Shown one piece after another: positions 5,929-32,391 of a stretch of DNA of 64,000 bases. The notes beneath the pieces were generated by a model. That model saw only the letters and a list, made by a program, of their open reading frames with translations, was not told the DNA's origin and did no database searches. Every line of letters begins with the position of its first letter. Position 1 is the first letter of the stretch. Source of the stretch: Bugula neritina (lineage: Eukaryota; Animalia; Bryozoa); assembly GCA_964035545.1 (NCBI GenBank), contig OZ037765.1:33293504-33357503 (forward strand), read 5' to 3'. A program made the position numbers and the translations under genes.

Positions 5929-8900
5929 ATGAGCTCCTTTGGTGCTCAGAGTCATTCACCTCGTTCAGCGGTGAGTTACCTACCATCTGTATCGACTGCC
6001 ATGTTTGCTTTGTCTGTTACAGCTCTTGTAGTGTTTTGTATTTTATGAGATTGTGTTTACAAGATCTATTTTGCTATTAGCATTGTGAAATAAATGTTTC
6101 CAGGTTTTTATTCTAAAAACAGTTTCAGACTATCAGATGAGTTTATGGCTAAACACCAACTTGGTGCCGTGTGTTTAAATTGTTGTGTTGCTTTTCAGTC
6201 CAGTCTTTGAAGGATTATTCAGAATACCTGAATATCTCTTGTGAAAAACACTGATTTCTAAGTTCGCCTGCAAAACCTCTACAGTTAGTGACTTGGTGCT
6301 AATTAATTCTTGTTCTGTCCTTATTTTTATTCGGCAGGTAATGCATTATATGATTAGCTGAAGTCAACTTTGGTTCAAATCATTTGAAAAAAAGATTTAA
6401 TTGAAAAACAATTTCTCCACCCTGTGTAAATTTGCTAATTTTCACATCAATATCAGTTTTAATGCCTGAGAGATATATAGATTTTTGCGCTGTGTATTTA
6501 TAAAACCACCCACAGAAAATTATTTTGAAATTTTGGCCCAACTTATGCATGACTCAAATTATTTCAACTAATTTAAAGTTATTGAGACGTTTTGTGGTCC
6601 CAGTTCTATGTGGTCCCATTTGTCAACCTGCAATCACGCTTCACCTGCCTAGTAATCAATGTCATTTCAACTACCTATCTGTGCCCACCTTAATGATAGT
6701 GTAGTGATTCACACTGGGCCGAATGAATAACTGATATCTGCCTTGTCTAGTCATGTCCTAATCCGCCGGAATCAACATGATATCAAGTTTGTTGAATTCA
6801 TCTCAATAAATATACTTTGGTGTCTTTTATTGCCATTACCTCATATTGTTTTGAATAAGTTGTATACAAAACAACTGATTGCACTGGCTATGGGAGTAAC
6901 CATTGTTCATGCTTCACTTATGAAGTTAATATTTGAAATAGACAATTCAAAGTTCTATGAACTAGCAGGAATTATTGTGAATGCTCTTTCAGACTAGTTG
7001 TGCACCTGGCAATACTTGTATTATAGTTGCTTATTTTTGGCAAAGACTTTTACTAGTTGAGTTCCTAACTGCTCTTGTGCTGTTTTATTGCGATACTTTT
7101 TACAGAGTCCCTACAACAGGTCACACAACAACAATGATCAGCCTCGGACTGAGCGAATAGAAATGAACAATAGGATTCAAAACGGGTCAAAAAATGGGAG
7201 CTATGACTCTCGTCAAAACTTTTATCAAGAAAAGTACTACTCAGGGGGCAAGGGAGTAACTAACCACGGGTATCACGGCTCATCTATGGAAGATGTCAGC
7301 AGCGTACCTCGAAGATCACATGCTAACAATGGAGTTACAAACAGAGCCTACATTCCGTCCACGAGCAGTGACGATGGACTTAGGTCGCCATCAGAGTACG
7401 CCAACATGGGCAACATTCCTTTACCTTCAATAACGGGAGGGCTTGGCTACCATGACACTAACCGATATCAAACTAATGATATCTCAGATTCTAAAATTAA
7501 AAAGAAAGGCGTTTGTCAATCAAGGAAATGCATTTGCATCACAGCTGTAATAGTTGCTCTGATATTGCTCATTGGTGCTGGAGTCGTGATTTATCTATAC
7601 CTTGGTATGCAGAATTTATAATATTCTTTTGAACTGTATATTTTAAATATACTCACACACATACATACATATATGTCATTATAAAAAAAAATTGTACGTA
7701 TATGGAAACTTTGAGAAAACATTGCCAGCAAAATAAAATGACAACATTTAATAAATTATCGTAGGTATAGTTTAAATAAATTCGTTTATTGAGCTTGCAC
7801 TATGCACTTAATTAGAAATGCTTTGAAAAGACAACAAAGAGGTAATTTGTTTGTATATCTAATTTCAAATTTTCGGTACCTAAGGATTAAGTCTTATGAC
7901 AGTAAAATTTCTGTTTTCTTTTAATTGCTCTGCTTGTGTATTGTAGGTACAGACCTGTTGACCAATAGAGGTGTTACACAGCCTACTACAGTAGAGCCAG
8001 GTGAGTGTTGGATACGGAGAGAGTGGTTGACGGAGCTGCATATATTCCTCATTGTTTGTGTAAAGCTTCTTGCTTGGGTTCAAAGTTTACTGCAATGGAA
8101 GACTTCTTAGTCTGAGCACGTCAAATCTGATGGTTTATAATCAGATTGAGTTTGATTCCTCTCATATCTTATTAGATGTGGAAACTTTCTTAAGCTTTTC
8201 TCTTAGTTTCATCAGTTAGTTAGATATCACAGGTTTTTCTGGCCTGTGACTGTTTGAGCTGAATCTATGAATATCATTACAATTGAAATATAATTACTTT
8301 CCAGTAGATCAAAATTCATTTCAACATAAATTTATTACTGTCAGGTCTTGCGTTCTTAGAGAACTTATAGCTGACTGCAATATGTTTAGTTGTCATGGTA
8401 ACAAATGGTTTCATATAGAAAATTGTTGCGGAAGTTTTACCAGCAGGTTGCTGCATGTGTTTGCACCCATAGATCTAATATTAGTTTACAATTTTGCGGT
8501 GAAACAATATGGCACTGAATAGTTTGATTCCATCATCTTTTACTCTACCCTTGTAATTAATATACGTATGCATAATTATGCTATTACCTTAACTAGTTTC
8601 AGTAATATATTCATAAGCTAAATACCCTGTAGAATGACCTGCTATACTAGGTCTACTAATACATGGCTAAGGATTCCACTCAAACCCTGTGTATTTGATT
8701 TCATTAATTGCAGCTAGTTCAACATTAAGTGTCATTATCCCACCAGCTACAACGGTTACTAGTAATGTGACTGTAACTACTGGCCCCGAGTCCTCAACTG
8801 AAAGTCTAACTACTAGCACTAAAGGTCTAACTACTAGTAATGCTACTAGTACTACTACTAGCACAACTACTGCAGGTATAAGAGTTAGTTACCCCAACAG

Positions 8901-11900
8901 CTATCCGCTTACTTTCTCTAGTTTGAGCTTACCAAAGTCACCCTGCACTAGCTTCTATAATTTACACTGCAAGCTTCATCTCTCACTGCTTCACATATTT
9001 AGTGGTATTGTGTGTTGTCTTCTAACATGTTTATTGTAGTTGAACTTTTTTCTGCTAGCCTGACTGGCGGCTAATTGTGATTTTATGTAACTCTTGAGTC
9101 GGAATTTTCAAAAAGAATTGTTTGCAGAGTTAGATCATTTGTTATGGAATTCATTGTTATTCGGTATCAATCGGTCAAGGAGCTTTCTACATATTGATAA
9201 CAGTGCCGCCCTATGAATCACTCTTTCAGTGAGAGGAAGTGTAAATACCTCATAACCGAGTTCATTATTTGTTGACAATCAATATTTTACCTTGTTTACT
9301 CTTTCTTAGCCATTACTAGTATCTATAGCTTTTCACCTATATAGCTTTGTACCTATATAGCTTTCTATCTTTAGCTTTGTATCTGTAGCTATGCCAGATG
9401 CAGACATCTTCTCTGGTGAACTGAGGCTAAACGAAACCTGGTCATCGAATTTGTCTGACCCCGCATCTCAGGCCTTCCAAACCAAGTCACAAGAATTCTC
9501 AAACTTTGTAAGTTGCGTTTGTGGCTGAATATTTTTTTGGTTTTTATAATAGTTAAGTTTGATGAAAAACTTAGTTTAGTTGTTCAAATGATATTATAGA
9601 GATTTTAATATTAAGATTTTGTCTAAAGACGTTTTATATAATCTTTTTGTATGGTAAGGCTTTGAGAAGTTATTTTGGTTTTAGTGCAGAAAATAGCATT
9701 ATATCTTGTGACTAGATTTTATATCAACTACCTGTCACGTGTGGGATAACATTCTTCTTCCATTGCATTGTTACATAATAAACTTAATAGATAATGCAGT
9801 TACTAACTGCTTTATCATCAATGCGATAAAGGAACTGGTGGAATTTTCTTATTCATAGCAGAAGTATTTTAAATTTAAGAAATCACATTGATTAATATTA
9901 TCAACCAGTACTTAGTGAGTTGACTAAACCTTGTCCAAACATTCAGTTTCCACACTGATTGAGAGCTCCAATATTCTACTAGTTATTTATTTACTAAAAC
10001 TATTTTGTTGTGTCATGTTGTTCTGACCCTCATACCAGAGTGTTAAGAGGCTGTTACAGCACCTATTAGCTGGTTATGCCTGATTTGTCATTTGGCAAAG
10101 TCTGTCAGTCTTTTGAAGCTCATTTTTCGCAAATACAAATACCGGGCAGGTATTTAGTGCATAGTATTTGTACAGGTGCCTTTGAATACTTGCATTTCTA
10201 TCTTTTATAGGTTAGGAAACTTGCATAATATTAAAGCATGGTACTTTTCAACTGTAAATGTCATTTCTTTTACAGATGGACAGCAAAATGTCTTCCAGTC
10301 TAATACTAGGACCTTCATATAACAATACTCAAGTAATAAGTCTGAGGTGGGTGTATCTGATACGTCTCAAACTGAATATCAAGTAACTTAGACTATGATT
10401 GCCCTGCACTTGGTCACAGTTCCAGTCATTATACACCAGGTTTATGATTATTAATTTAATTCTGTACTAGACTGAAGTCAATGAGCTGCTATTAAGTCTA
10501 TCCGATATCTTCTGCTTCAATGGCTCACAACAATAGAATACAATACTCCTGCTTGACTTCTTAAATGTTACATCACATCAGCTTTTTCTCTCTCTCTTTA
10601 TGGCTGATAAAGCACACAGTGACTTGTGTTTACTCAGCCTACTGTCAAACTGCTCTTAGTGCCTGCTAGTTATTTAAGCTTAGGTTTCTGATTGTAAGTT
10701 TGAGACATTCAATGGACTACCCTTCCTTTATTACGATTGTTGTCTAAGAACTCGGGCTTCACCAAAGCATAGCTTTCTGGAATGTCTATAGAAACACTTC
10801 ATTCAGTGACCCCAGTCTTTGTGCTGCATCTAGTGATTCCCACAGCCTTCTGCATCTTGGGCTGCTGAGCTACTATTGGCTGTCAATTTCTCAATTCAAA
10901 GACTATAAAGTATTTAATTTGTATGTTTCAAGGGAAGGAAGTATCAAAGTTATATTTATCATAACGTTCAACCAGCCGGTGGTGACAGAGCAAGTTGCAA
11001 GTGAAATAAACCGATTAGCTGACCAGGATTCTACTCTCAAGATAATAGCTGGCAGCGTCAGCGTCACAGGTATGTCTGCTGCCGATGAGGTCATTGATTT
11101 GTGGCTCTGTGTAATTCCTTTAACTTATTGCATTTATTAAAACTTTGTTTACAAATATACTTTTAATGTTCTACTAACATGCTATGAATAGGTTACAAAC
11201 ATGCTATGAAAGCGCTATTCTACTATTTCAGAATATGTAGAGGAAACTGCCTGTGGCCTGGATAGCCTTATTCTCTGTAACTGGGTGTGCAGAGAGAGAA
11301 GTGAAGTAGCCTGTGATACTGTAAACGATTGCGGGGATTGGTACGACGAGTCCAATTGCCCCGGCCAGTCCGTATCGTGTGACTTTGAGACGTCAGAAAC
11401 TTGTGGCTATGAGATTCAGCAGACGGACTACCAGTGGGTGTACAACAGCGGCAACACGAGCATCCCCGGGACTGGGCCGCAACACGACCACACCTACCAA
11501 AACGAATCAGGTACAGGTCAAACAATTTTTGTGATAATTTATAAAAAAATCGCATAATTATGTTCTTAATTTATTGTTTTAAGAAGGCTTATATTTCCTC
11601 TAACCACCAAGAGTTGACTTTGTCGAAAGTTTGCTCTTCCCACATCATATTAGTTAGCTTTTATACCTGCCTTCACATGGATTGGATTTTACCAGTGCGA
11701 TGTCTTTATTTTCCAACTCAAGTTGGAAACTTAATGATTAAGTTACGAAGAGTTTCTAAAAAACCGTTGAGTCACTGAGATGTTTTGATGACTCATACTG
11801 AACCGTGAGATTATCAATCATTATATAATTATCATATTCACATTCCTTCCCCGCACCTTTATAAACTGAAATACAGCTGCATGTCATATATTAATGAAAT

Positions 11901-14900
11901 CATTGACTTTGACAAATGTACTTCGGAGTTGAAGAAATGGTAATTTCTGCCAAATACCATAACTTTCATGCTTCGAGTAGATATAACTATGGTGCTATGT
12001 TGTATTCAACTTACTCTTGTGTAACTATTTAGTCGTGTGGCATGACAATATGACTTCTAAAGCTGTGATTTATTACTCCATCCCCAACACTAGTAGCAGT
12101 GCAGTGGCCTATTTCACACAATATTTATGTTTCTATTCTATCTAGGCTCTATTTGCTCACTCTATCCATATTTAAACTCTCTTATATCAAACTCATTCAC
12201 AAGTCTCTGTTTGTATTCATATCGATAGTTTGATAACTGGCAGTGATGTCATGGGGTGTTGAGTCACACGTATTCTAGAATGTTCTTCCTCTTACAGGTC
12301 ACTACTATTACACAGAGTGGTGTAACAAGTGTCAACACGGAGATGTGGCCACCATTTATTCCCCTTGGTATGTCACTAGGCAGCCATCTTGCTTCTCTTT
12401 CTACTATCACATGATGGGTCATCCCACTGACATGGGGGCCTTGTATCTCTCAGCTTATGACCAGAATCTCACTGAACAGGTTAGTCACATGACTTCCCTA
12501 TTAGCATAATCTTGCTTAGATAACACTTCTGTGTTTTAGCTGAGGTCATTTGAAGTTCACGTATTTTCCTCCTACTAATTAGGTGTGGATGCCTTCACTT
12601 AGTTTATCATTGTCTGCCAAAGTTAGTCTTTTGTTGAATATTGAGAGTTTTCTCTGTAAAATTACCATATAGTTGCTGTGGACGAGGGAGAAACCGGATG
12701 CTGAGGACAACCAGGGCAGCTGGCAGCGTGTTGAAGTTGACATTCCTCCAGGAAGTTACAGGTTCACGTTTGGCAGTCTGTTCCACGGTGGGAGTGATCT
12801 GGGAGACAAGGCTATTGATGACATACTGATAGAGGACGGGGCGTGTGACATCCGTCCCGGTAAGCAGAGTTTTCCTGGTCTCTCCTCTTTTCTCTAAAAT
12901 ATCACTATGGTTACCCTGCATGATGCTTTGAGTCTAGGAATATGTAATAGAGGCACACAATACTATCAGTTGAATCTGTCTGTCTGTGTGTCTCCCTGTC
13001 ACATCTGTTGGCGCTGATTCTGAACTATGAAAACACTTGAGTGATATACTGATAACATTTTCAGCTCTTCACATAACCAGAGTTGTATAATGAGAAGCTT
13101 GCACGGTATTATAAAACAATACAACATGTACATGTGATCATATTGCAGCGTGTAACGCCTCCCTCTTCTGCTCCATCACCAACGAATGTCTCTCCTCGGC
13201 TGACAGACCTCTTTGTAACGGGAAGTTTGAATGTCCGGACGGATCAGATGAAGATGGCTGTTCGGGTTGGTTGTCCATCTTGTCTCTAAACCTCTTAGTT
13301 TATATCATGACTTTCCAGTAAATTAAAAATCAATTCACATGATGAAATGTTACAGCTGTATGTAATTGCAAATTGTTATCTAATGTTTTGTGAATTCATT
13401 TTTGATTGCAGGTTCAGTTTACTCGACTACTTTTGAATTAGGGATGGACTTATCCACTTACTCCTTGAAGAACATGTTTGATAATCCGCAATATCAGTGG
13501 GGGGTGTCCAAGGGCCCCACCTCGGTTATAGGAACTTACCATGACAACACGTACAAGAATCCTCTTGGTGAGTGTTAGCTTGTTACAGCCATTCTCATTG
13601 GTTGATTCATCGGTTCATTTCCTGAGTTGCAAAAGGAATTCTCCTACCCAATAACTACCCTCTTAGGATTACTACGATTTTAGTACGATTGCACTGAACA
13701 CCTTGGACTCAATCACTGAGAATTCTACTGAAAGTCACCCAGTGCAATCAGGAGTATATCAGTTACAGTCATACGAGATGCAACTGCTTGCAACCAGTCA
13801 TGTGATATATTGATACGGTGTATGTATGTAAGGGATTGAGATTTTTGTATTACTAGTAAATTAAACGGATATAGGATATGTTATCTAATCTCCTCGCTTA
13901 TTGTGAGATATGTAGAGGAATGTGCTTCCCCTTGAGTTCAACACATCTCTGTGCTGTGATATGGTAACAGTTGAAGTCAACTGGCTAACGGGAAATGTGT
14001 AGTGTTAGTCATTTGTTCTATTAATAGAATACTTTTATTTGCTAGCTAAGGATAACAGATCGTAAAATGTCAACATAAGAAAAAAGGTTTTGTTAACATC
14101 CCAGTCGCCATGTTGTAAGCTGCATGACTATATAAATTCTGTAGTGTGTCTTGTTCAAACATTAGTCAGTGTTGTGATAATATTAAGTATGATACACCCA
14201 TCAGTGACGTTAAACTATATTCTGTATTCATTTGCTAGTTGCAAGCTTTGTTATAGAATAGGAGTCCAATGTAACTTGGAAGGCAGCTTTTTCCTTTCTC
14301 TGTAATCAATATTATTGACCTTGACATTCCCTTGTAGGTCACTACGTCGCCATTCTTCCTGGTACGTTGTCAGAAGTTCCCGCGGGGTCTGAAAGTCCGC
14401 TAGTCATCGAGCAAGACCTGAGTAGCAACCAAGGTCGCTGTCTGCGTTTCACTTACAACATGAACTACGAGGGGTCAACCTCCGGCACTGGCAGCACCCT
14501 CAAGGTGAGCTCCAGCGCTTCATCTTAGCTGACCCACTTTTTTTCAAATCTGTTTTGATTTGATAACATGTAATGTTGCGTTTACCACCAGTTGTGAAGA
14601 GCGAGTCAATATCAATATATTTTATGTATTTCCCAGGTGTTGGCTAGAAATGTTGTGACAGGGAACTCGAAGGAACTGTGGAATAACACCGAACTGACAG
14701 GGCGTGACTGGATGCACGCCTCCTACAGCATCATGGCTGAACCCCAATCTTACCGAATAGAGTTTGTGGCGGCCCGACTCAATGGCGATGGAGTTGTCAT
14801 TTCTCTGGATGACATCACCATTATGAATGGTATGTTGCTTATATAGGTCACTGTAAGTACACTGATAAATTAAGTAGACTGTACGTGTGATATGCTATGT

Positions 14901-20900: not shown

Positions 20901-23900
20901 GTGCTGGTCAGTTCCTTTGTCCGTATGAAGAGAAGTGTATTCCAACCTCTGCACAATGTGATGGTATTGCTCACTGCCAAGGGGGCGTAGACGAAGAGGA
21001 TTGTGGGGGTAAGTATCCTGGCTAATATGGGGGGAGGTTATTTTCTCTTTGCTATGAAGTATTCCTGTCAATAGAGGAACGAGCTAGCATAAGTTAGGGA
21101 GGAATTTACCTTTTACTTACTAAAGTCAAAATATGGCTGAAATGGCCATTTTTAATGAGTCTCCTTTCTTTATTTAGCAGCAGACTCTGGAGACATTTGA
21201 ATTTTCTTTATAGACTCAGTGAAACAGAATATAATATTTTCCCACGTCTGTCGATGAGACGTCTGCAACTCATTTCACTGCTTTTCTTTCAGATTTGGCT
21301 GAAGCTTTGGACTGTAACTTTGACAATGATTTCTGCCAATGGACTCGTTCGACTACTGGCCTATCGTTAGCAAGGGAGGCTGGTTCAACCCCCCTGCAGG
21401 ATACTGGCCCCTTATACGATAACACGCAAAACAATCTAGTTGGCTTTTACCTCTATCTCAGTAAGTATACTTGATGAAGTGCTTTGAGTTAGATATCAAC
21501 TCAGGAGAATTGTAGGGCAGGTTGTAAGAGGGGATTTAGTTGATTAGTGTTTAATAGAAAGGGCAGATAACTATAGTTATTCTAAGTCTCTGAAATATAC
21601 TTAATAACCTGAAATGGATTTGTTGTTGGGACAGACTCAATGTTTGTAGCCTTTTTACTAAAAGTGTACTATCGTACTAAGTATTCATGACTGTACAATG
21701 ACAACGTATAGGGTTGATAGCAACATGTCAAAATTAGGTATTATCTCCCCTGTCTTTGAATTGTATACTTATTTTAGTGTATGCAGCAAAACTATATTCT
21801 AAATTATGTGGTTTGAGTTCCAATAACTGCAGATATGAAATACCACATGAATGTAATACAACTAGGTATATAACACTACTGCAGGTTATTCTTAGAATTA
21901 CATATATATAGAGTCGCTCACTGATTGTCGGTGATTTTATAGAGTCTAAAGTTTCTTCTGGAACAGCTACATTGACCTCTCCAGCTGTGAAGATTTCTAC
22001 AGGTCATTGCCTGACTTTCTACTATCACATGATCGGCCGTAACATCGGGTATCTCAATGTAAGTCTAGACTTATCATTCTCTCTGACTTTCACTCACTCT
22101 CACTCAGCGTCACTCACTTTGATTTACTGTGAATCAAATGTAACATGTGTAACATGTGTATGGATTAATAGTTGTGGAATGTATGCATACTGGCTGCTGG
22201 CAGTGATGTCACATGCTTGTACATGTCACATGCTTGTACATGTCACATGCCTGTACATGTCACATACTTGTACATGTCACATACTTGTACATGTCACATG
22301 CTTGCAGGTGTCAAATGCTGCCTCCCCCGCAGACAATGCGCTACTCTCCATCTTCGGAGCTCACGGCTCGGCCGAGTGGCACGTCGCCAAGATAGACGTT
22401 CATCCAACAGACGCCCTTCAACTGAGGTTCACCTTTACCTCCAATGGGCTCTTCTCTAACACAGCTATTGATGACATCACATTCAGACCGGGCTCATGCG
22501 GTACGTCCCTCACCGTATGCTCAGTAAAGTCTTCAGGCTATCTGTGTGATTTGCTGTCCCTATTATCAAACCCATAACTGTTCTACTCTGTACTGCTCTG
22601 TTCTACTCTATTCTACTCTGTACTATACTCTGCACTACTCTATACTCCGTTTTGTTTTGTTCTAGACTGTTCTGATGACCACCAGTGTCCCGTGTCTGGG
22701 GAGTGCTTTGATAAAATGGCCAAATGTGATAACATCCCGCACTGTCAAGATGGATCTGATGAACAGAACTGTGGTAAATACTTGGCTTATGAATCTCTTG
22801 CTGTATATCTTATATTATAGAGTGTAATATGGTACTAGTAAAATATATATGATAATTTAACATATTGGGCTACATTATAATACAGCATCTGATATAGTAT
22901 ATCAATAAAAATATAGCTTAAAATAATTATAAATAATAATATAGTTATATATATATATAGTAATATAGTATAAATAATAATATATGTAAATAAAGATCTA
23001 GTATAATATATAAGTAATAATATGTTATGTAATATAGTATTATATATAAATAATGATATAGTAAATAAATAGTAATATAGCATAATATATAAATAATAAC
23101 ATAGTATAATATATAGGTATAATTTATAAATAGTAATATGTTATACAGCATGTACAGTAAGTAGTTTATTTCCTTCATTCGACAGGATGTGGTGCAGATC
23201 AGACGTTATGCGCAGCTTTTGATGCTTGTTTACCTACGGACTTCATCTGCAGCCAAGCTAACGCCGACTGCCTGGTAGAGGGTCAGGTTATTGATTGCAG
23301 TAAGTGTCCTGTCCTCTTACTGTATCAATGAGTCATCTCTTACTATATCAATGAGTCATCTCTTACTATATCAATGAGTCATCTCTTACTATATCAATGA
23401 GTCATCTCTTACTATATCAATGAGTCATCTCTTACTATATCAATGAGTCATCTCTTACTATATCAATGAGTCATCTCTTACTATATCAATGAGTCATCTC
23501 TTACTATATCAATGAGTCATCTCTTACTATATCAATGAGTCATCTCTTACTATATCAATGAGTCATCTCTTACTATATCAATGAGTCATCTCTTACTATA
23601 TCAATGAGTCATCTCCTCTTACTATATCAATGAGTCATCTCTTACTATGTTAATGAATCATCTCCTCTTACTATATGAGTCATTTCCTGCCATAGTTCCA
23701 TAGTAGCAGTATAATCACATTGTCTAAATGAAAATGCTTATATTAGTTTTTTAAAATATAACTTTTTATTTTCACCCAGAATGCAACTCGACATTCCAGC
23801 GATCATGTGATCAAGGATTTTGTTACGACCAGCTGGCATATTGTAACGGACACCAAGATTGTGATGATGGCAGTGACGAGCCTCCGCTATGTGGTTAGTT

Positions 23901-26900
23901 GAGTTATAATATTGTAGTCACGTCTGTGTGATGTGTCTGTGAAATGAAGTCATTAGTTTTTGTGTGTGACATGTGACCACATGTGTGTGACATGTGTGTG
24001 ACATGTGTGTGACATGTGTGTGACATACAGTCCTGTGTGATAAGATATGAAAACCATTCCTTTTCCACTTTCAGCTACGGACTGCCCGAGTGGTTACATA
24101 GCGTGTCCCGACAAATCCTATTGTATTCCCCAAGCCTTCTGGTGTGACAATCATGCAAATTGTCCAGACGCAGCCGACGAGCAACTCGGATGTGGTGAGT
24201 AGTTTACTCGCTGGTACTCTAACTGATACTCTAACTGGTACTACTACTGGTACTCTTACTGGTACTCTAACTAGTACTCTTACTGCTACTCATACTGGTA
24301 CTCTTACTGCTACTCTAACTGGTACTATAACTGGTACTCTAACAGATACTCTTACTGGTACTCTAACTGGTACTCTTACTGCTACTCTAACTGATACTCT
24401 TACTAGTACTCTAACTGGTACTCTTACTGGTACTATAACTGGTACTCTTACTGGTACTCTAACTGCTACTCTAACTGCTTCTCTTACTGCTACTCTAACT
24501 GGTACTCTTACTGGTACTATAACTGGTACTCTTACTGGTACTATAACTGGTACTATAACTGGTACTCTTACTGATACCCTCTGGAATATTTATATATCAC
24601 TCATTTGTACGAGTATATCGAGTGTTTACATATCTATTATTGTATATTTCAGTTCCTCAAGTTCCGAATGGAATCGCGACAGACACAGGTAGATAAAGTC
24701 TCTTGTCTCTACGCCTTCTGCTCTTCCAGCTCTCCTCCCATCTCTACTGACACCTCTCTATGCTGACACCTCTCTATGCCGACACCTCATCTCTACTGAC
24801 ACCTATCTCTGCTGACACCTATCTCTGCTGACACCTCATCTATGCTGACACCTCTCTATGTTGACACCTCATCTCTGCTGACACCTCTCTATGCTGACAC
24901 CTCATCTCCACTGACACCTCTCTCTGCTGATCTCCACCACACATTCCATTGAAACCAGTATTGCATCAGCAGGCCAAAAGAAACATTCCATTTTAAAGAT
25001 AAACCGTAAAGTTTCGGAATACGGAATATTTATTTTACTGCTGAATATTATTTATATTAATACAGACTCGGATAGAGTCTAGTTTATTTTTATATTTCAT
25101 TGTTATGTAATTAAAATTTATAAACCTTAAATGTTATCTGAGTATTATCGTCTGCTAAACCTTTTATTTATTATAAATTATTTATGCAATTTAAAATCAC
25201 TTTAGTCATGTGTTATAGTCCTGACTGAAACAATAGTTAGTATTACGTAAGATTTATTTATAGACTTGAAATATGAGTCATATCCGTATGATGAAAATCA
25301 TTTTATGAATTTGAATTTTGTTGCCTAAATGAAGGCACAACATGTGCTAAGCCGTGCATGCATTACTCAACTGCCTATAATATGAGGAATTCTGCATGAA
25401 GGCTTATGACCATTATGAGTGGACACTGTAAATACACATTCTATTTTGTATATACTTTTTATCATATGCAACTTTCTTAACTCACTACTGTCCATGCAGA
25501 TGGTTTTCTTCTATTTTATTATAATTATAGTTTGAACTTTTCTTCCAATGTGCTGTTAGAAACTTCAGTACAATAAAATATATGAATACTATATTAACAC
25601 CTCGGTTTTATTATGTAACATGTTTTTCCCCTGCTTCATCCTGATCTTGACCTCATCTTAACCTTGAACTCTAAACTCCATGTTGCTCTGTTCACCCGCT
25701 TTGTGCTCCATCTTCTTGCAACATCAGTGTGCAATATAGTAGAAATAGGTGTAGTAATGGAGAAATTGGAAAAGCCCGAGTTCTAGAAAAGAAATGTAGC
25801 AATCTTAGGCTATTAGATTTTTCCATTACTGCACCTAAACACAGTAGTTCCCGTGTAGCTTGAAACTAGAATGTATTGTACTTAAACAGTAGTTTAAATA
25901 CATCTACTCGCACATTGCCTCTTTAGTTATAAATGCTTGCATTTCTTTGCATGGTTTGAATGTCTTAAAGCGTTGAATGATATACTTTGCTTTTACTCGT
26001 CAAATATTTAGCTGAAGTTGAGTGATTTTATTCTATGAACTTTGAATGTTCTAAATGTTCTGTTAAACCTCCAGTAGAAGTTTTTATGGAAATTGACAAG
26101 CCGCCTTGGGAGTTATTTTCCCAGCTTAGTTATACAAATAAGGAAACTGATTAAATGCCAGTCAACTCTCACTATTCTGAGAAATAAGCTACAACTTTGA
26201 AATTTGTCTGTCTGAACTAAGGATATTCTTATGCATAAAACTTGCTAAATGGTTACAGAATTGTGTTTTCAAAACAAATTTCAGAACTAATCTTTAGTTT
26301 TCAAGAATAAAAATGTCCATATTGTGTAGTTTTTGTCTACATGTTGCATGATATGCGTTAGTTATAGAGCTACGTATGATTTCCCTGTAGTGGATACAGC
26401 GTAGATGTAGTATGTACAGCATCGTACCTGTAGTGGATACAGTGTTGTTGCTGCCTGCATGTTTACCCGTCAGTGTAGTGTGTGTACACGGTGTGCTTGT
26501 AGATTGCTCCACCACTAACTTTGTTTGTCTTAATAACTCACAAGTCATCACCCGGGAGAAGTATTGTGACGGTACAGTTGATTGTGAAGACGCATCTGAT
26601 GAGCCGGCGCATTGTGGTGAGTCATCAGGATTTGTCTAATATTTGATAAAAAAGAGGCTCTTCATTTCATTCTGGAAATAGAGGGCAGATGAGTTCAAAG
26701 GTCAACCTAAAAAACATCAATTTATTAGGATGAATAACTTTTTAGTCTAATTTGTACAGCTGAGCCTTAAACTTTGCATTGTGATTTGAAAATTGAAATT
26801 GTTTAATTCAAATTTTCAATTTAAAGCTTGTACATAAGCATTTCCGTTGCAACAATTTATTCTCATGTCACATTCTTAAATTTATCGACTATATTTTCCT

Positions 26901-28390
26901 ATCAAGCAATGTAAATATATAACTCATCTATACCATCACTGAGCATGCTCACAACTACTCTATCAACTATACTCGTATTGCAGAGTGCTGTGATGGAAAG
27001 GAATTCTCCTGTAAATCTGGTCACATGTGTATCCCATTGACCTCTAGATGTGACAGCACTTATGATTGTGCTGATTTCTCCGATGAAACTTCTTGCAGTA
27101 AGTTTATAACTTCAAATACAATTATGAGAAGGCAACTTCAAAAGTTGCTTTTCATTCCCAAATTGTTAAGCTTATATTTTATACAACACATTGTATACTG
27201 CATAGTATGTTTCCCTGACTGTATAGAATTTTATCAAGGCTGTGTATAGCACACCCCATAGTCCATGCTATGTGTACCAGAGGCTATGCTGTGTTTATAT
27301 TACATGATGACTCTTATTTCAGACTGTACAGCAGACGAGTTCCAATGTGATGCCGGAATCTGTCTGACAGGAAATAAACGTTGCGACGGAAAGTTGGACT
27401 GCAATGATTGGTCAGATGAAACAAATTGTAGTGAGTTTTACTTTATTATTACTGATGTGAAAGTACATGCCAAGTTTCTATTACGGAGTTAACTGATTTT
27501 TTTATAAATATTATAGAGAATAGACAACTCCTCGTGCTTTACCTGATCTAATTAAAATTTTTAAAGTGCATTTTAAACAATAATAATTACAATTTTGCTT
27601 GCACAAAATATCAAAGTAAAAGTTACATTTATGCTTATGAATAGTTTTATGCATATTCAAAATTGAAAAATTATTGTTTTAATCATTTTTTAAAGAAGAA
27701 ACAAAATTTTAGAAGAAAATATTCAAAACTGTCTTGTGTTTAGCTTGTAGAAGTTCCCAGTTTCAATGTGACAACAGTCGGTGTATAGATGGTGCGCTGA
27801 GATGTAACGGCAGAGATGATTGTTTAGACAACTCCGATGAGTTTGACTGTCCGTGTGCCTTAACTGAGGTAATGTCTTCACTTGTTGTATTGTAATGTTG
27901 TCACTTTCTCTATTGTAATGTTGTCACTTGTTGTATTGTCTTGGTGTGAACTTAATCATTTATAACTACAGTACATAATAGGTAACATATAAAATAATAT
28001 AATATATATAATATTCCAAATTATTATAATATTTGAATAGAAACACAGCGGTTATAAATTGGCGTAAACCTTGAAATTTTGAATTACATTTCCTTAGAAT
28101 CTATATGTTGCCTTCAAATCAGTCATCACAGCACACCTATATACCTTATTACATTGTAGGTGAGATGCACATTGGACACAGACAGACGTTGTATACCTGA
28201 GGAATGGAAATGTGATGGATTCAAGGACTGTGAAGGGGCAACTGATGAAGCCTTCTGCGGTTAGTATTGAATGTAATATGTTTCTGTTTAGAAGTCAGGG
28301 CAGTTGGATATGATAAAAGGAGAAACTGGGTCAATACAGTATATAATAATTATGATATGTGACCTGGCACCACAAACCAGGGGATGTACA

Positions 28391-28480
<90 letters not shown>

Positions 28481-31400
28481 TGATATGTTTTGTGTTGAGT
28501 TATGACGTTAAAAAATGTAAATGCTTTGGAATTTTGTGAAATGACATAATTTGAATTTAGATCTAATTTCCTCTGCTAAAAGCCTTTGAATCCTTGAATT
28601 AATGTATTTAACATAATTCTTTAGGCCGCAAGTAATAATTTGATATATGAATCTTATGTGTAACCATAATAGCTGTGCAACTCATAACATTGTCTTTCAA
28701 ACAGGAAACTGTTCCGAGTTCACCTGCACCGACTACAGTTGTTTTCTCTCCACTCAAGTATGTGACTCAGTGAGTGACTGTAAAGATGGGGAAGATGAGC
28801 TCCACTGCTGTAAGTTCAACTTATGAACTATGAGTCACTCAAAGACAGCAATAAATGCTCAGTACTACATTGCAAAGTGCAACTTTTTCTTCAACCATAA
28901 CAGAAAATTACCAATTGAATTACATCAGCCATTTTTTCCATTTCTTGCCAAAAGAAGGGAGCTACAAAAAAAATTAATATGAAACTATAATCAGGTTGCT
29001 GTGAACCATAGTTACGAGTAATTTTACCAAAATCTGTACAAAAGTTTGGTTTTTAAAATTTTTCCTTCTGATTTTGTCAGAAGAGTGGTTTATACCAAGT
29101 AAAACTACAGTCTTCAACATTTTCAAAGCAAGTAGTGTAATTATTTCTTATATTAATGGGTGCAGTAAACTATCACAGCTGTATGTTTATATAAAAACAT
29201 AATTATTTGGCTGTAAGCTTTTGGCCTTTAGGGCATTGAATATAGACTTAGGATTAACATTTCTGCAATGTAAACGCACTAGGAATGCAATTAACTGGAG
29301 TATTGAAGAGGTTGTAATAATCTAAGTTCCTTTGATGGCTAATGCCGAGTAATAGGTTGTTATTACTTATTGGTTAGGTTATTGCCTGCCCTGCCCTGGG
29401 CCCACTATCTTTGTATGAAGAACTTGAAGCTATATTTCACAGAAAGATAACTGCTCATGCTACAAATATTTCCTAAAATAAAAACTGATACATAAATTAA
29501 TACTGAGCAGATTGTTCTATCATATATCAGGACACACGTGTCTCTCTTTGTCACCATTTCCTAGTAGATTATCTAGCACGTGTTGAAAAGTTATTAACAA
29601 ATGCTAAAAATAGACACACAATCATTCCATTTTTAGATTATAAAATTAAGCATGTAATTTAAAATTCGACAATCCATTTTCACTGTAGGAAGGGAATGCT
29701 TTGCTATAAATATACATGGCACTGCTGTTGAATATGATTTCTTAATTAAGCATATGATTTTAGCAAGCTGGTCAATTTAAATAGAAACAAGCTTAAAAAG
29801 TCACAATGTTTTACTTAATGCTAACAATAACACAAATATTCAGCTAAGTGCTAGTAACAGGGGAGATAATATCGTTTAATTACAGTCCAGCAAGAAGCCA
29901 ACTTGATGGTAACAGTACAGGTAGCCTCAGCAACGTACAGTGTTTGCTATGATGGTTGGAGTGCTGCGTGGGGCTCCCAGCTATGCAGACAGTTGGGCTA
30001 TGACCGTGTACTCTCCACACGGATCCTGCCAACAGACGGGCTGCCAGGTCCTTGGGCTAAACTGAACTACTCTCAAGGCTACCAGAAGTTGTCGGAGTTG
30101 GAAATCGTCCCCTCATGCTCCAATGCCCTGGCTGTAGAATGTGAGGCTAAAGGTGTGTTACTTATATTCTGTATATAGATACATCTGACTTGGACAAGAA
30201 TAAATAATAATTTGAGTTTTTGTTTCAAGACAGAATCGCCAAATAAGTTGTGATGTTTAATGTCAGCCTGACACTGTTTTGAGATATTAAACAAGTCAAC
30301 TTTTTTGGACTAATCTTAAAATTTTGTAAACGAATGTGATTTGCTTCTGAAACAGCTTTTTAAAACGTTTCTGAAAATTATCATAAGTTGAGAAATTTTT
30401 GAGCTAAGCAGTTAAATATATGTTATATTCCAGGCTGTGGAGTCGGTAAGGGGGTCAGACAAGCCCCCTACCTTATCGGTGGGAACTTAGTCTCAGAGTC
30501 TACAGATTGGCCTTGGCTAATGCCCATATATTATTCCAGCAAATTAACAGGCACCGGCGTCCATATTGGAAATGGGTGGATCGTCACAGCCGCCCATCTT
30601 GTGCAAGCTCAGCTAATCAGAGATGGAGTTCGGTTCATTGAGAGGTGAGACACTATGCTGCACTGAGAGCATAAATAACTTACTCTGTGTGCTATAAATA
30701 GCTTACTCTGTGTGCTATAAATAGCTTACTCTGTGTGCTATAAATAGCTTACTCTGTATTCTATAAATATCTTACTCTGTATTCTATAAATAGCTTACTC
30801 TGTGTTCTATAAATAGGTTACTCTGTAATCTATAAATAGCTTACTCTGTATTCTATAGATAGGTTACTCTGTATTCTATAAATAACTTACTCTTGGTGCT
30901 ATAAACAGCTTATTCTGTATTCTATAAATAACTTACTCTGTATTCTATAAATAGCTTACTCTGTATTCTATAAATAACTTACTCTGTGTGCTACAAATAT
31001 CTTGCTTTGTAGAATATAAATTATATGATTAAACTTCGTAAGAAGAGAGATTTTCACGAATATAAACATGCATATCATGTAAAAAATACATTTTATGGAA
31101 ACCAGCATATACTAATTAATTTTTCTTTTATTAAAATATTCATATTGAACTTTTGCTGAGATTTCATTTTTATTAAAGGTATTTGGGAAGTAGTAGGAAA
31201 TAACCTAATTTATCTACATGCTGTTCGAATTTTCACTTTGACCTCTTTTCTAAAATGCCTGAACTGCTTTGAAGTAGAAATATGAACGGTTTTTTGTTTT
31301 TATACTTTGAATATGTATACCCTGCTAGAGGCAACTTAAACGCTCCCTGTAATACTTTGCTTATGCTGTGGCACATTGTTTAGGAGAGAAAACACGCCTC

Positions 31401-32391
31401 ACCTGTTTGAAGTAGAGCCAACCTCACTCATTCGTAATCAATCAGGAACACGACTTCCCGTCACCAAAGTCGTAGTACACCCGGAGTTCACACACTCACC
31501 GACGTTACGCAATGACGTTGCGCTGATGAAAGTAAACATGGATTCCAACTATCCGAGTATCTGTCTGAACCCAGGAAGTGTCAGCCACACGCTGTGCTAC
31601 GTGGCTGGGTGGGGGTCAGTTGATGGTCAAAGTAAGTCTAATATTTTAAGTTTCATACTGAATAATTTTCAAATTTCATCTGACAAGTAGAAATTTACAT
31701 TATAGTTTTGTCTATATGTCTAATTTTAATCATTGTGCATTTATTGTTCTTATAATATGCATACTGTTTATGATTTGAGTTTGGTAGCCAAGGATGCTGC
31801 GAATTAGACATTGAAGTACATTGATAGAAAATATTTTAAAACCAACAACATTGACAATAGCTCAAGATAAACTTCCCAAGGCAATGTATCACCACGCACT
31901 ACGCAATGTTGTATCCCTAATGTTTTCAGACATTGCTGTTGACCAGCTCAGAGATACCAGGGTGGATGTCCTTCCTGACCTAGACTGTCTCAGAGCTTGG
32001 AATTCTGGGGGTTTCACGGTGTTCTACGCCAGTACAATGATGTGTGGGGGCGGTGAGAACCTTCCCTCTACTTGTTTTGTAAGTATAGTAGAACTGCAAA
32101 CATCACTAGTTGTATCTCTTAACATGTGAATCTATTTTATCTATAACTCGTTTACAGTTGAATGGATTTCAATTCTCGAAGTTATGTTTTGTTGAACTTG
32201 TGTTGAATTTGCACACGCAGGGTGACAGCGGAGGTCCACTGATGTGTCTGAACGCTGACACAAATACGTGGAACCTGCGGGGAGTCGTCAGCTTTGGTGA
32301 CACGAACTGTTTGAGACAAGAGAAGCCAAACGTTTTCACCGAACTAACTTCGTATTATTCCGATTGGATAGAAGAAATTACATCTGGCTGA
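5929..32391 (+). CDS. Type II transmembrane mosaic serine protease (enteropeptidase/MALRD-like): TM-mucin-SEA-L-MAM-L-MAM-L-L-SRCR-protease1-(L-MAM)x4-L x10-SRCR-protease2; ~2,700 aa, 44 exons
   Basis: Approximate phase-compatible exons: 5929-5970, 7106-7604, 7947-8000, 8714-8875, 9389-9507, 10276-10346, 10933-11069, 11232-11510, 12298-12479, 12673-12859, 13149-13265, 13412-13567, 14338-14504, 14637-14829, 14931-15050, 15249-15368, 15490-15616, 15786-15924, 16202-16392, 16521-16906, 17343-17534, 17823-18889, 19918-20182, 20348-20704, 20898-21008, 21293-21460, 21943-22058, 22308-22500, 22666-22773, 23186-23299, 23780-23893, 24075-24194, 24653-24688, 26503-26616, 26984-27097, 27323-27430, 27744-27868, 28160-28259, 28705-28809, 29886-30153, 30434-30644, 31384-31631, 31930-32078, 32221-32391. 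Motifs: hydrophobic anchor [24 protein letters not shown], LDLa CDGxxDCxDxSDE, MAM CDFE/GPxxDHT/CLxFYY/IAIDD, and TAAH, D and GDSGGP twice. Confidence 0.85.
7106..7604 (+). CDS. Protease gene exon: cytoplasmic tail and signal-anchor transmembrane helix
   Basis: ORF 7088-7621: polar N-terminal tail, basic cluster KIKKK, then ~24 hydrophobic residues (type II topology); tacag| acceptor and |gtatgc donor. Confidence 0.88.
9389..11069 (+). CDS. Protease gene: SEA domain (3 exons)
   Basis: [48 protein letters not shown] fits the SEA pattern, including the G|S(I/V)xV autoproteolysis motif. Confidence 0.8.
16202..17534 (+). CDS. Protease gene: first S1A serine protease domain (3 exons)
   Basis: [60 protein letters not shown]. 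Confidence 0.95.
17823..18889 (+). CDS. Protease gene: large exon encoding LDLa-MAM-LDLa-MAM
   Basis: ORF 17801-18928: [62 protein letters not shown]. Confidence 0.93.
22205..22307. repeat. 17-bp tandem repeat (ACATGTCACATGCTTGT), ~6 copies, abutting a splice acceptor
   Basis: Visible array; the final unit ends cttgcag|GTG. Confidence 0.9.
22666..28809 (+). CDS. Protease gene: cluster of ten LDL-receptor class A repeats, mostly one per phase-1 exon
   Basis: Successive ~105-125-nt exons, e.g. [35 protein letters not shown] and [35 protein letters not shown]. Confidence 0.88.
23316..23685. repeat. 23-bp minisatellite (TTACTATATCAATGAGTCATCTC), ~16 copies
   Basis: Near-perfect array starting just after the donor at 23300. 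Confidence 0.95.
24210..24580. repeat. 12-bp minisatellite (ACTGGTACTCT[A/T]), ~30 copies, intronic
   Basis: Visible array just downstream of the donor at 24195. Confidence 0.92.
24740..24930. repeat. 16-18-bp tandem repeat (CTGACACCTC(AT)CTCT[A/G]), intronic
   Basis: About 10 imperfect copies of CTGACACCT with short spacers. Confidence 0.85.
25748..25835. mobile_element. 88-bp miniature inverted-repeat element flanked by TA (possible Tc1/mariner-type MITE)
   Basis: ta|GGTGTAGTAATGGAGAAAT ... ATTTTTCCATTACTGCACC|ta: ~19-bp imperfect TIRs with TA on both sides. Confidence 0.5.
28396..28476. repeat. (TA)n microsatellite
   Basis: Pure dinucleotide run. Confidence 0.97.
30434..32391 (+). CDS. 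Protease gene: second (C-terminal) S1A serine protease domain (4 exons)
   Basis: [37 protein letters not shown]|[20 protein letters not shown]; TGA stop at 32389-32391. Confidence 0.93.
30672..31000. repeat. 23-bp minisatellite (CTATAAATAGCTTACTCTGT[G/A]T[G/T]), ~14 copies
   Basis: Visible array starting ~30 nt after the donor at 30645. Confidence 0.93.

What the first reader, a model, noticed from the sequence alone, without database searches (positions are those of the whole stretch)
5929..32391. Giant membrane-anchored double protease: two enteropeptidase-like modules in series, both with intact catalytic triads
Seen: one continuous phase-compatible exon chain gives TM-SEA-(LDLa-MAM)x2-LDLa2-SRCR-protease1-(LDLa-MAM)x4-LDLa10-SRCR-protease2, and both protease domains keep His, Asp and Ser. 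Known: enteropeptidase has one protease domain, polyserase-1 has tandem protease domains without long spacers, Drosophila Nudel has two with the second inactive and no MAM, and MALRD1 has MAM/LDLa arrays with no protease. Inference: this architecture matches none of the families I know and could be a self-contained cell-surface proteolytic cascade with a receptor-like ligand-capture arm between the enzymes.
Basis: partly seen in the sequence, partly recalled or inferred. Interest (0 to 1): 0.8.

Follow-up and report, generated by a model that had tools for sequence, protein, structure and literature searches.

The report
Two-headed membrane-anchored serine protease gene
A moss-animal (bryozoan) gene really does encode one giant membrane-anchored protein with two apparently working protease heads separated by a long binding-module arm. 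The same unstudied design sits unnamed in annelid, ribbon-worm and other bryozoan genome records, so it is a conserved family rather than a one-off.

Summary
On the + strand, about 40 GT-AG exons (7163, or 5929, to 32391; about 2,650-2,690 aa) encode TM, Ser/Thr stalk, SEA, (LDLa-MAM)x2, LDLa x2, SRCR, protease 1, (LDLa-MAM)x4, an LDLa run, SRCR and protease 2. Both heads keep His57, Asp102 and Ser195.

The critical 17534/17823 junction is a consensus phase-1 donor and acceptor. It is kept in two other bryozoan contigs, one with an intron of only 171 nt. A Watersipora RefSeq protein (2,428 aa) is colinear with the window and crosses this junction. The gene is single-copy, and the exons on either side of the junction are under purifying selection (dN/dS 0 and 0.10).

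The claim that the architecture matches no family holds only for characterised proteins. Owenia (annelid) has the same two-headed layout, and two nemerteans have three-headed versions; all are unnamed in the databases.

Family traits:
- Tyr or Phe at P1 of every activation site.
- Ser or Thr at position 189 in most heads.
- Head 1 runs directly into an LDLa module.

Bryozoan head 1 has an odd Arg189/Asp226 pocket, and bryozoan head 2 has lost the Cys42-Cys58 disulfide. Self-activation is plausible but untested, and no RNA evidence was found.

The contig is bryozoan, not human.

The parts
5929..5970 (+). Possible first coding exon (ATG plus 14 codons), spliced to an acceptor at 7106. Tentative; the alternative start is the ATG at 7163.
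   Evidence: ATG at 5929, donor GCG|GTGAGT after 5970, in-frame acceptor ctttttacag|AG at 7105/7106.
7163..7604 (+). Cytoplasmic tail and single transmembrane signal-anchor (TM 7529-7603). This gives type II topology.
   Evidence: a 25-residue hydrophobic stretch about 120 residues after the ATG, with no Pfam family. The Owenia and Lineus orthologues have an N-terminal TM at residues 221 and 181.
8714..8883 (+). Ser/Thr-rich, mucin-like stalk exon. The boundaries are uncertain; the alternative donor is after 9009.
9361..11069 (+). SEA domain in two exons (9361-9520; 10902 or 10773 to 11069). It carries a G|SIKV motif at 10937 that resembles the SEA autoproteolysis site.
   Evidence: Pfam SEA E 0.0025, below threshold. 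The second exon aligns with the Watersipora N-terminus. Owenia has a significant SEA at the same place.
11232..12859 (+). Divergent LDLa-like module plus MAM 1 (exons 11232-11510, 12298-12479, 12673-12859).
   Evidence: The three Pfam MAM pieces cover profile positions 1-157. LDLa E 0.055. 58-61% identity to Watersipora.
13149..14829 (+). LDLa-like module plus MAM 2 (exons 13149-13265, 13412-13567, 14338-14504, 14637-14829).
   Evidence: LDLa E 2e-4. MAM E 3.8e-7 for the last exon. Colinear with Watersipora residues 280-500.
14931..15368 (+). Two LDLa modules (exons 14931-15050 and 15249-15368).
   Evidence: Pfam E 1.4e-8 and 2.2e-9.
15490..15924 (+). SRCR-1 (exons 15490-15616 and 15786-15924).
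   Evidence: Only a weak exon-level hit (SRCR_2 E 0.12). 52-59% identity to Watersipora residues 577-665, and that protein scores two SRCR_2 stretches.
16202..17534 (+). Protease head 1 (exons 16202-16392, 16521-16906, 17343-17534). Linker Cys 16223; activation site SPY|IIGG (Tyr 16253-55); His57 16379; Asp102 16657; Cys122 16717; Arg189 17363; Ser195 17381; Asp226 17483.
   Evidence: Pfam Trypsin E 1.8e-11, 1.5e-17 and 1.9e-12. PDB alignment places Arg at position 189 and Asp at 226. Coordinates.
17535..17822 (+). Junction intron (288 nt, phase 1) between head 1 and the second stem. It holds a 14-nt tandem repeat at 17547-17657.
   Evidence: Donor TAG|GTGAGT and acceptor ttgcag|GG. This is the best-scoring in-phase pair. 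The sites are conserved in L001 (171-nt intron), L003 and L004.
17823..18889 (+). Single large exon: LDLa, MAM 3, LDLa and the N-terminal part of MAM 4.
   Evidence: Pfam MAM 2.4e-28 and LDLa 2.8e-13. dN/dS 0.096 against L004. Single copy in the genome.
19918..22500 (+). End of MAM 4, LDLa, MAM 5, LDLa, MAM 6 (exons 19918-20182, 20348-20704, 20898-21008, 21293-21460, 21943-22058, 22308-22500).
   Evidence: Pfam hits. Splice sites. Colinear with Watersipora residues 1282-1720.
22666..28809 (+). Run of ten Cys-rich LDLa-type exons: 22666-22773, 23186-23299 (degenerate), 23780-23893, 24075-24194, 26503-26616, 26984-27097, 27323-27430, 27744-27868, 28160-28259, 28705-28809.
   Evidence: Pfam Ldl_recept_a for nine of the ten. 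23186-23299 has no LDLa match. Junctions are mostly phase 1-1.
29886..30152 (+). SRCR-2.
   Evidence: Pfam SRCR_2 E 1.1e-8.
30404..32391 (+). Protease head 2 (exons 30404 or 30412 to 30644, 31384-31631, 31930-32078, 32221-32391 including the TGA stop). Linker Cys 30436; activation site APY|LIGG (Tyr 30469-71); His57 30595 (TAAHL, no Cys58); Asp102 31514; Cys122 31562; Ser189 32067; Ser195 32227; Asn226 32329.
   Evidence: Pfam Trypsin. The best PDB match of the last exon is the elastase chain 1bru_P. 40-64% identity to Watersipora head 2. Coordinates.

Best explanation
This is one single-copy bryozoan gene of about 40 coding exons. It encodes a type II membrane-anchored mosaic serine protease of about 2,650 residues with two catalytic heads in series.

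Domain order: cytoplasmic tail, TM, Ser/Thr stalk, SEA, (LDLa-MAM)x2, LDLa x2, SRCR, head 1, (LDLa-MAM)x4, a run of about 10 LDLa, SRCR, head 2.

It belongs to a conserved but uncharacterised spiralian family. Bryozoans and the annelid Owenia have two-headed versions; nemerteans have three-headed versions.

Shown:
- The architecture.
- The intact triads.
- The conserved splice junction.
- Purifying selection on the two exons flanking the junction (exon 18, the last exon of head 1, and exon 19, the first exon of the second stem).
- Orthology.

Inferred mechanism:
- Each head is made as a zymogen.
- It is cut after a Tyr (SPY|IIGG and APY|LIGG).
- It stays tethered through the linker Cys-Cys122 disulfide, so both active heads remain on one cell-surface stalk.
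- Every activation site in the family has Tyr or Phe at P1, and most heads, including head 2 here (Ser189/Gly216/Asn226), have a chymotrypsin/elastase-2-like pocket. The heads therefore most likely activate themselves or each other.
- Head 1 of bryozoans (Arg189/Asp226) would be a retuned effector.
- The MAM/LDLa arrays act as substrate- or partner-binding exosites, as in the enteropeptidase heavy chain.
For: - Domain order by exon-level Pfam scans.
- The triads and other key residues lie in canonical motifs.
- All 39 junctions are in-phase GT-AG, and the exon lengths sum to a multiple of 3.
- The junction has the donor TAG|GTGAGT and acceptor ttgcag|GG in phase 1.
- The same donor and acceptor phase is kept in L001, with a 171-nt intron and the downstream stop at a different place, and in L003 and L004.
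- Watersipora protein P0215 is colinear with window 11222-32379 and crosses the junction.
- P0215 has MAM x6, Trypsin x2 and SRCR_2 x2. Owenia P0024 has SEA, LDLa x18, MAM x4, SRCR_2 x2 and Trypsin x2.
- Head 1 runs straight into an LDLa C-x-F-x-C motif in every orthologue.
- No orthologue has an internal TM.
- dN/dS is 0 for exon 18 and 0.096 for exon 19. The gene is single-copy.
- The terminal heads form one clade with 85/86 support.
- Aromatic P1 and Ser/Thr189 hold across the family, whereas deuterostome and cnidarian relatives have Arg P1 and Asp189.
- PDB alignments fix Arg189 and Asp226 in head 1 and give the elastase chain 1bru_P as the best match for head 2.
Against: - No transcript evidence was found. 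Two word searches for RNA-derived fragments returned none.
- The orthologous proteins are computed gene models, and such models can merge neighbours. The Batillaria 'double' has an internal TM and is such a merge.
- An in-frame stop lies 2 codons past the donor, and an AATAAA lies at 17744, so a short single-head isoform is possible.
- Head 2 lacks the near-universal Cys42-Cys58 disulfide.
- Head 1 has an unprecedented Arg189/Asp226 pair that could plug the S1 pocket.
- Activity, specificity and self-activation are all untested.
- The boundaries of the N-terminal exons (8714-11069) and the acceptor of exon 37 are uncertain.
Confidence: 0.7

Rival explanations
1. There are two products rather than one. 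Either two tandem paralogous genes have been mis-joined by reading across a gap, or one locus mainly makes a short single-head protein (stop at 17540, polyadenylation after the AATAAA at 17744) and the long form is rare or absent.
For: - An in-frame TGA lies at 17540-42, two codons after the donor, and an AATAAA lies at 17744.
- There is no RNA evidence either way.
- Gene-model merges do happen in this family: Batillaria P0216 has an internal TM.
- Mya arenaria has shorter and longer isoform models.
Against: - The donor and acceptor, and their phase, are conserved in bryozoans at about 45-50% protein identity with a 171-nt intron, while the position of the stop is not conserved.
- Every intron of this gene has an early in-frame stop (median about 8 codons). 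AATAAA/ATTAAA occurs at 1.85 per kb in the gene's introns.
- The second half has no start, signal peptide or TM of its own.
- Four independent gene models from three phyla (Bryozoa, Annelida, Nemertea) join head 1 directly to LDLa and have only an N-terminal TM.
Confidence: 0.12
2. It is one protein, but only one head is a working enzyme. The other acts as a binding or regulatory pseudo-protease despite keeping the triad, as with the dead domains of Nudel and polyserase-1.
For: - Head 2 has lost both Cys42 and Cys58 in the window and in Watersipora.
- Head 1 has Arg189 paired with Asp226, which could close the S1 pocket.
- Owenia head 2 has Glu at the oxyanion-hole position 193.
Against: - Both heads keep His57, Asp102, Ser195, Gly193, Asp194, Ser214, Gly216, Cys122 and an Ile/Leu16-type N-terminus.
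- The last exon of head 1 (exon 18) is under strong purifying selection; no dN/dS was computed for any head-2 exon. Head-2 conservation is shown only by 40-64% identity to Watersipora head 2.
- Dead homologues normally lose triad residues.
Confidence: 0.15
3. It is one active two-headed protease, but it is not self-contained. The Tyr-P1 sites are cut by a separate chymotrypsin-like activator, and the two heads act in parallel on different substrates rather than as a cascade.
For: - Single-headed bivalve relatives also have Tyr at P1, so aromatic P1 does not need a second head.
- Most TTSPs and enteropeptidase depend partly on other proteases for activation (own knowledge).
Against: - Ser/Thr189 pockets compatible with aromatic P1 lie in the same polypeptide.
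- Co-conservation of matching P1 and S1 residues across three phyla is what autoactivation predicts.
Confidence: 0.3

Closest known systems
Uncharacterised spiralian multi-headed MAM/LDLa/SRCR proteases: Owenia fusiformis CAH1772368.1 (A0A8S4MU04), the Watersipora subatra RefSeq protein named 'MAM and LDL-receptor class A domain-containing protein 1-like' (P0215), Lineus longissimus LOC135503121, Tubulanus polymorphus XP_074657056.1
   Same: - Same colinear order: SEA, LDLa/MAM, SRCR, head, LDLa-MAM array, LDLa run, SRCR, head.
- N-terminal TM only.
- Head 1 fused directly to an LDLa.
- Tyr or Phe at P1.
- The terminal heads form one clade.
   Different: - Nemerteans have three heads.
- Numbers of MAM and LDLa modules differ.
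- Arg189/Asp226 in head 1 and loss of Cys42-Cys58 in head 2 are specific to bryozoans.
- None of these proteins has been studied.
Enteropeptidase (TMPRSS15)
   Same: - Type II anchor.
- SEA, LDLa, MAM and SRCR modules ahead of a disulfide-tethered S1A head.
- Enteropeptidase light chains are among the PDB matches.
   Different: - No CUB domains were found here.
- Two heads instead of one.
- P1 of the activation site is Tyr, not Lys or Arg.
- The pockets are Arg189 and Ser189, not the trypsin-like Asp189.
Polyserase-1 (TMPRSS9)
   Same: A membrane-anchored polypeptide with several S1A heads translated from one ORF (own knowledge; PMC11172050 summarises polyserases).
   Different: - Polyserase heads are adjacent, with no stem modules between them.
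- Its third head is inactive.
- Its activation sites are basic.
Nudel (insects)
   Same: Two S1A domains separated by LDLa repeats: LDL(2)-SP-LDL(2)-SPH-LDL(3). The Tenebrio form is membrane-anchored (PMC11172050).
   Different: - Nudel's second domain has lost the triad.
- Nudel has no MAM, SRCR or SEA.
- Its activation site is R|VVGG with Asp189.
MALRD1 / MAMDC4 and 'MLRP' MAM-LDLa array proteins
   Same: The inter-head arm (17823-22500) is an alternating LDLa-MAM array. It is the part that gives the orthologues their automatic 'MALRD1-like' names.
   Different: Those proteins carry no protease domain, at about 27-34% identity. The name is a by-product of domain composition, not orthology.
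Molluscan 'corin' / 'atrial natriuretic peptide-converting enzyme-like' models (Mytilus, Mizuhopecten, Mya, Octopus, Aplysia)
   Same: - Type II anchor.
- An internal S1A head followed directly by (LDLa-MAM)x3.
- Tyr at P1 and Ser189 in bivalves.
   Different: - The N-terminal stem has Fz/PKD modules instead of LDLa-MAM.
- The models seen have only one head.
- Their heads form a separate clade.

Membership tests
S1A chymotrypsin-fold serine peptidases (Pfam PF00089) | Trypsin-domain profile match for each head | tested here: met
   Head 1 exons score E 1.8e-11, 1.5e-17 and 1.9e-12. Head 2 exons score 9.4e-7, 2.9e-7 and 3.7e-10.
S1A chymotrypsin-fold serine peptidases (Pfam PF00089) | His57, Asp102 and Ser195 in canonical motifs, plus Gly193, Asp194 and Ser214 | tested here: met
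   TAAHC / DIAL / GDSGGP in head 1 and TAAHL / NDVAL / GDSGGP in head 2.
S1A chymotrypsin-fold serine peptidases (Pfam PF00089) | Conserved Cys42-Cys58 disulfide around the catalytic His | tested here: not met
   Present in head 1. Both Cys are absent from head 2 in the window and in Watersipora.
Type II transmembrane serine proteases (TTSP) | N-terminal cytoplasmic tail and a single signal-anchor TM, with no cleavable signal peptide | tested here: met
   A 25-residue hydrophobic segment lies at 7529-7603, after about 120 residues. Orthologues have a TM at residues 181-221. The test was hydropathy only.
Type II transmembrane serine proteases (TTSP) | Activation motif Arg/Lys|(I/V)VGG, with a linker Cys paired to Cys122 | tested here: inconclusive
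   The linker Cys (16223; 30436) and Cys122 (16717; 31562) are present, but P1 is Tyr in both heads.
Enteropeptidase (TMPRSS15) orthologue | CUB domains in the stem (SEA-LDLa-CUB-MAM-CUB-LDLa-SRCR) | tested here: not met
   No CUB hit in any exon scan, nor in the orthologues.
Enteropeptidase (TMPRSS15) orthologue | A single trypsin-like head with Asp189 | tested here: not met
   There are two heads. Arg189 is fixed by the PDB alignment and Ser189 by the family alignment.
Polyserase-1 (TMPRSS9) | Protease domains directly adjacent, with an LDLa-only stem | tested here: not met
   The heads are separated by four MAM, about 14 LDLa and one SRCR module.
Nudel | Second protease-like domain without a catalytic triad; LDLa as the only other module | tested here: not met
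   The head 2 triad is intact, and MAM, SRCR and SEA are present. The Nudel layout is taken from PMC11172050.
Spiralian multi-headed MAM/LDLa/SRCR proteases (Owenia, Watersipora, Lineus, Tubulanus models) | Colinear domain order with two or more heads and only an N-terminal TM | tested here: met
   tblastn colinearity of P0215 over window 11222-32379. Pfam counts. Hydropathy.
Spiralian multi-headed MAM/LDLa/SRCR proteases (Owenia, Watersipora, Lineus, Tubulanus models) | The internal head continues within about 5 residues into an LDLa (C-x-F-x-C-x-N-G) | tested here: met
   Seen in the alignment. In the window it is formed by splicing 17534 to 17823.
Spiralian multi-headed MAM/LDLa/SRCR proteases (Owenia, Watersipora, Lineus, Tubulanus models) | Aromatic (Tyr/Phe) P1 at every activation site | tested here: met
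   All 10 heads of the four orthologues and both window heads.
Spiralian multi-headed MAM/LDLa/SRCR proteases (Owenia, Watersipora, Lineus, Tubulanus models) | The terminal heads are orthologous, so the duplication predates the phyla | tested here: inconclusive
   Clade of Watersipora d2, Owenia d2, Lineus d3 and Tubulanus d3 with 85/86 support. The Watersipora d2 branch is long, and the internal heads are unresolved. The window itself was represented by its Watersipora orthologue.

The most novel reading that the evidence does not exclude
Spiralian animals carry a conserved class of membrane-anchored multi-headed proteases built as a self-priming unit. Every zymogen site has an aromatic P1 that matches the chymotrypsin/elastase-2-like pocket of a sister head on the same stalk. 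One head therefore fires the other, in cis or between neighbouring molecules, without any outside activator. In bryozoans, head 2 would be the igniter, and head 1, with its unique Arg189/Asp226 pocket, would be an effector of new specificity. The MAM/LDLa arm between them would select the substrate.
Probability: 0.25. Interest if true: 0.7.

Novelty: new variant of a known kind. Interest (0 to 1): 0.5.

Why it matters
Multi-headed serine proteases (polyserases, Nudel, ovochymase) are rare and poorly understood. In the studied cases the extra heads are often dead.

Here a two-headed form with both triads intact and a long modular arm between the heads is conserved from bryozoans to annelids and nemerteans. 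It also has a matched pair of unusual traits: aromatic P1 activation sites and non-tryptic pockets. This gives a natural system for asking whether tethering two proteases on one stalk creates a built-in activation cascade.

The finding also shows that the automatic names 'MALRD1-like' and 'corin' hide a distinct protease family in spiralian genomes.

Tried and rejected
- **RNA evidence.** The word search with exon 19 found only genomic fragments. The search with exon 18 found nothing. So there is no transcript support or refutation.
- **Joined protein and junction.** Searches were exon by exon by reference, and database orthologues served as full-length proxies. One script translated 31-residue junction windows to rank splice-site pairs.
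- **Splice ranking.** That ranking by local alignment picked exon-skipping pairs at several junctions. It was replaced by a search constrained to the conserved blocks.
- **Batillaria P0216.** It looked like a fourth phylum with a double head, but it has a TM at residue 1248 and two sister heads. I rejected it as two merged tandem genes.
- **Stop and AATAAA in the junction intron.** I rejected them as evidence for termination, because every intron has an early stop and 16 of 39 introns carry a poly(A)-like hexamer.
- **TSS-linked first-intron repeat signature.** Many introns here hold minisatellites of 12-23 nt, so it was not informative.
- **PDB search with exon 39.** No hit.
- **Literature.** Four searches found no description of the family. 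One search was a malformed query.
- **Structure and complex prediction.** Not run. Each head is split over three or four exons, and the orthologues exceed the 1,200-residue limit.

Full report
**What is in the sequence.**
The window is AT-rich eukaryotic DNA. On the + strand, stop-free stretches between 7.0 and 32.4 kb carry a long series of extracellular modules. Exon-by-exon Pfam scans give this order:
- A hydrophobic signal-anchor (7529-7603).
- A Ser/Thr-rich stalk.
- A weak SEA (E 0.0025).
- Two LDLa-like plus MAM units, two clear LDLa, and an SRCR seen only through orthology.
- A three-exon Trypsin domain (16202-17534).
- A 1,067-nt exon encoding LDLa-MAM-LDLa-MAM, then further MAM/LDLa up to 22500.
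- Ten Cys-rich exons, of which nine match LDLa.
- SRCR_2 (29886-30152).
- A four-exon Trypsin domain ending at the TGA at 32389-32391.

Both heads keep the triad in canonical motifs. Four modules fall below Pfam thresholds, and the boundaries of exons 2-4 and the acceptor of exon 37 are uncertain.

**Gene model.**
I restricted donors and acceptors to the edges of the conserved blocks. With that constraint, every one of the 39 junctions has an in-phase GT-AG pair, mostly with good consensus. Twenty-eight junctions are phase 1, as expected for LDLa-type module exons. The 40 exons sum to 7,971 nt, a multiple of three. An upstream ATG exon at 5929-5970 may add 33 residues.

One script translated 31-residue junction windows only to rank splice sites.

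**One gene or two.**
The exon ends ...ATA G|GTGAGT after 17534. The next exon starts ttgcag|GG at 17823. Both are phase 1, and the join produces a Gly codon followed by the first Cys loop of an LDLa. This is the best-scoring site pair available.

Conservation of the junction:
- The 367-residue exon found three related genomic contigs.
- In a relative at about 45-50% identity (L001), the last exon of head 1 ends ATC G|GTAGGT and the LDLa exon begins ttgtag|AT only 171 nt later.
- In L001 the first in-frame stop after the donor lies at a different distance from that in the window. The splice sites are conserved and the stop is not.

Why the stop and the AATAAA carry no weight:
- Reading into any intron of this gene meets a stop within a median of about 8 codons.
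- AATAAA/ATTAAA occurs 1.85 times per kb of the gene's introns.

Other evidence:
- Against the near relative L004, exon 18 has 6 synonymous and 0 non-synonymous changes, and exon 19 has dN/dS 0.096.
- The gene is single-copy in the 216-Mb assembly.

**Relatives.**
The exhaustive representative search with the 367-residue exon returned many giant MAM/LDLa proteins. Local BLAST with the window's protease exons showed that a subset carry an S1A head directly upstream of the matching LDLa-MAM stretch.

Named relatives:
- Owenia fusiformis CAH1772368.1: 2,620 aa, with SEA, LDLa x18, MAM x4, SRCR_2 x2 and Trypsin x2.
- A Watersipora subatra (bryozoan) RefSeq protein of 2,428 aa named 'MAM and LDL-receptor class A domain-containing protein 1-like': MAM x6, SRCR_2 x2, Trypsin x2.
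- Lineus longissimus LOC135503121 and Tubulanus polymorphus XP_074657056.1: three heads each.

The Watersipora protein aligns colinearly with the window from 11222 to 32379 (residues 66-2422). It crosses the junction: residues 857-922 map to 17339-17536, and residues 920-1282 map to 17816-18895. Owenia and Lineus have a single N-terminal TM and none between the heads.

A Batillaria 'double' has a TM at residue 1248 and is a merged pair of genes. This is a reminder that these are computed models.

Bivalve, gastropod and cephalopod relatives, annotated 'corin' or similar, have one head followed by (LDLa-MAM)x3 behind a Fz/PKD stem.

**Family traits.**
- In every orthologue the internal head runs within a few residues into an LDLa C-x-F-x-C motif. 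The spliced window junction produces the same motif.
- Every activation site of the bryozoan, annelid and nemertean proteins has Tyr or Phe at P1. The window has SPY|IIGG and APY|LIGG. Bivalve relatives also have Tyr. Deuterostome and cnidarian relatives have Arg at P1 with Asp189.
- Most heads have Ser or Thr at position 189.

Window-specific residues:
- Head 2 is Ser189/Gly216/Asn226. Its best solved match is the elastase chain 1bru_P. From my own knowledge that sequence is of the pancreatic elastase-2 type, which prefers large hydrophobic P1 residues.
- Head 1 of all three bryozoans has Arg at 189 and Asp at 226. This is fixed by the alignment to plasma kallikrein, where these positions are Asp189 and Gly226.
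- Head 2 of both bryozoans has lost Cys42 and Cys58.

Tree of protease domains:
- The terminal heads of Watersipora, Owenia, Lineus and Tubulanus group together with 85/86 support.
- The internal heads are unresolved.
- This is consistent with a multi-headed ancestor older than these phyla, but it is not proof.

**How it most likely works.**
- Shown: a type II anchored polypeptide with two S1A heads that keep the catalytic apparatus. Each head is preceded by SRCR and a linker Cys, and each has Cys122.
- Inferred from the known behaviour of TTSPs: each head is a zymogen, is cut at the Tyr-Ile/Leu bond, and stays disulfide-tethered. Both heads would then remain on one stalk, and SEA may be autoprocessed at G|SIKV.
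- Inferred from the matched P1 and S1 residues across the family: the heads activate themselves or one another. Limulus factor C, which autoactivates at a Phe-Ile bond (own knowledge), is a precedent for aromatic P1.
- Speculative: the role of the MAM/LDLa arm as a binding exosite, by analogy with the enteropeptidase heavy chain.

**Comparison and novelty.**
The gene is not an enteropeptidase orthologue: it has no CUB, no Asp189 and two heads. It is not a polyserase-1, because the heads are not adjacent. It is not a Nudel, whose layout is LDL(2)-SP-LDL(2)-SPH-LDL(3) with a dead second domain (PMC11172050).

It is a member of an unstudied spiralian family already present in public protein sets under uninformative names. 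Four literature searches found no description.

I rate it a new variant of a known kind, namely multi-headed mosaic TTSPs. It is of moderate interest. The interest lies less in the single gene than in the conserved pairing of aromatic activation sites with non-tryptic pockets.

**Provenance.**
Earlier notes of this scan call the genome a bryozoan, which agrees with the best full-length match being Watersipora. It is not human DNA. I checked that note here and extended it to the orthologues.

Noticed in passing
window 54501-56420 (-): A 640-residue open frame with a reverse-transcriptase domain (RVT_1, E 7.7e-31). It is probably a non-LTR retrotransposon copy.
   Followed up: partly
window 17547-17657, 22206-22319, 23314-23664, 24211-24577, 24739-24930, 30671-31011: Many introns of this gene hold short-period minisatellites: 14 nt x8, 17 nt x7, 23 nt x15, 12 nt x31, 16 nt x12 and 23 nt x15. 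Two unrelated 23-nt arrays sit in different introns.
   Followed up: no
window 34971-36374 (-), 45344-46336 (-), 50809-51507 (-): Long open frames on the opposite strand downstream of the gene, with no Pfam family. One contains a repeated QQVPSH motif. They are presumably exons of neighbouring genes.
   Followed up: partly
window 47138-47943: An 800-nt low-complexity tract that is open in several frames on both strands (poly-Val/Leu/Ser/Thr readings).
   Followed up: no
P0216 (Batillaria attramentaria model): This public gene model with two protease heads has a transmembrane segment at residue 1248 and two sister heads. It is probably two tandem genes merged by the annotator.
   Followed up: partly
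P0170 / P0199 (Acropora) and P0253 (Strongylocentrotus LOC585547): Cnidarian 'MALRD1-like' models carry an S1A head at each end of a MAM array. A sea-urchin model has four heads. All have Arg P1 and Asp189, so multi-headed mosaics also occur outside Spiralia, with the ordinary tryptic logic.
   Followed up: partly
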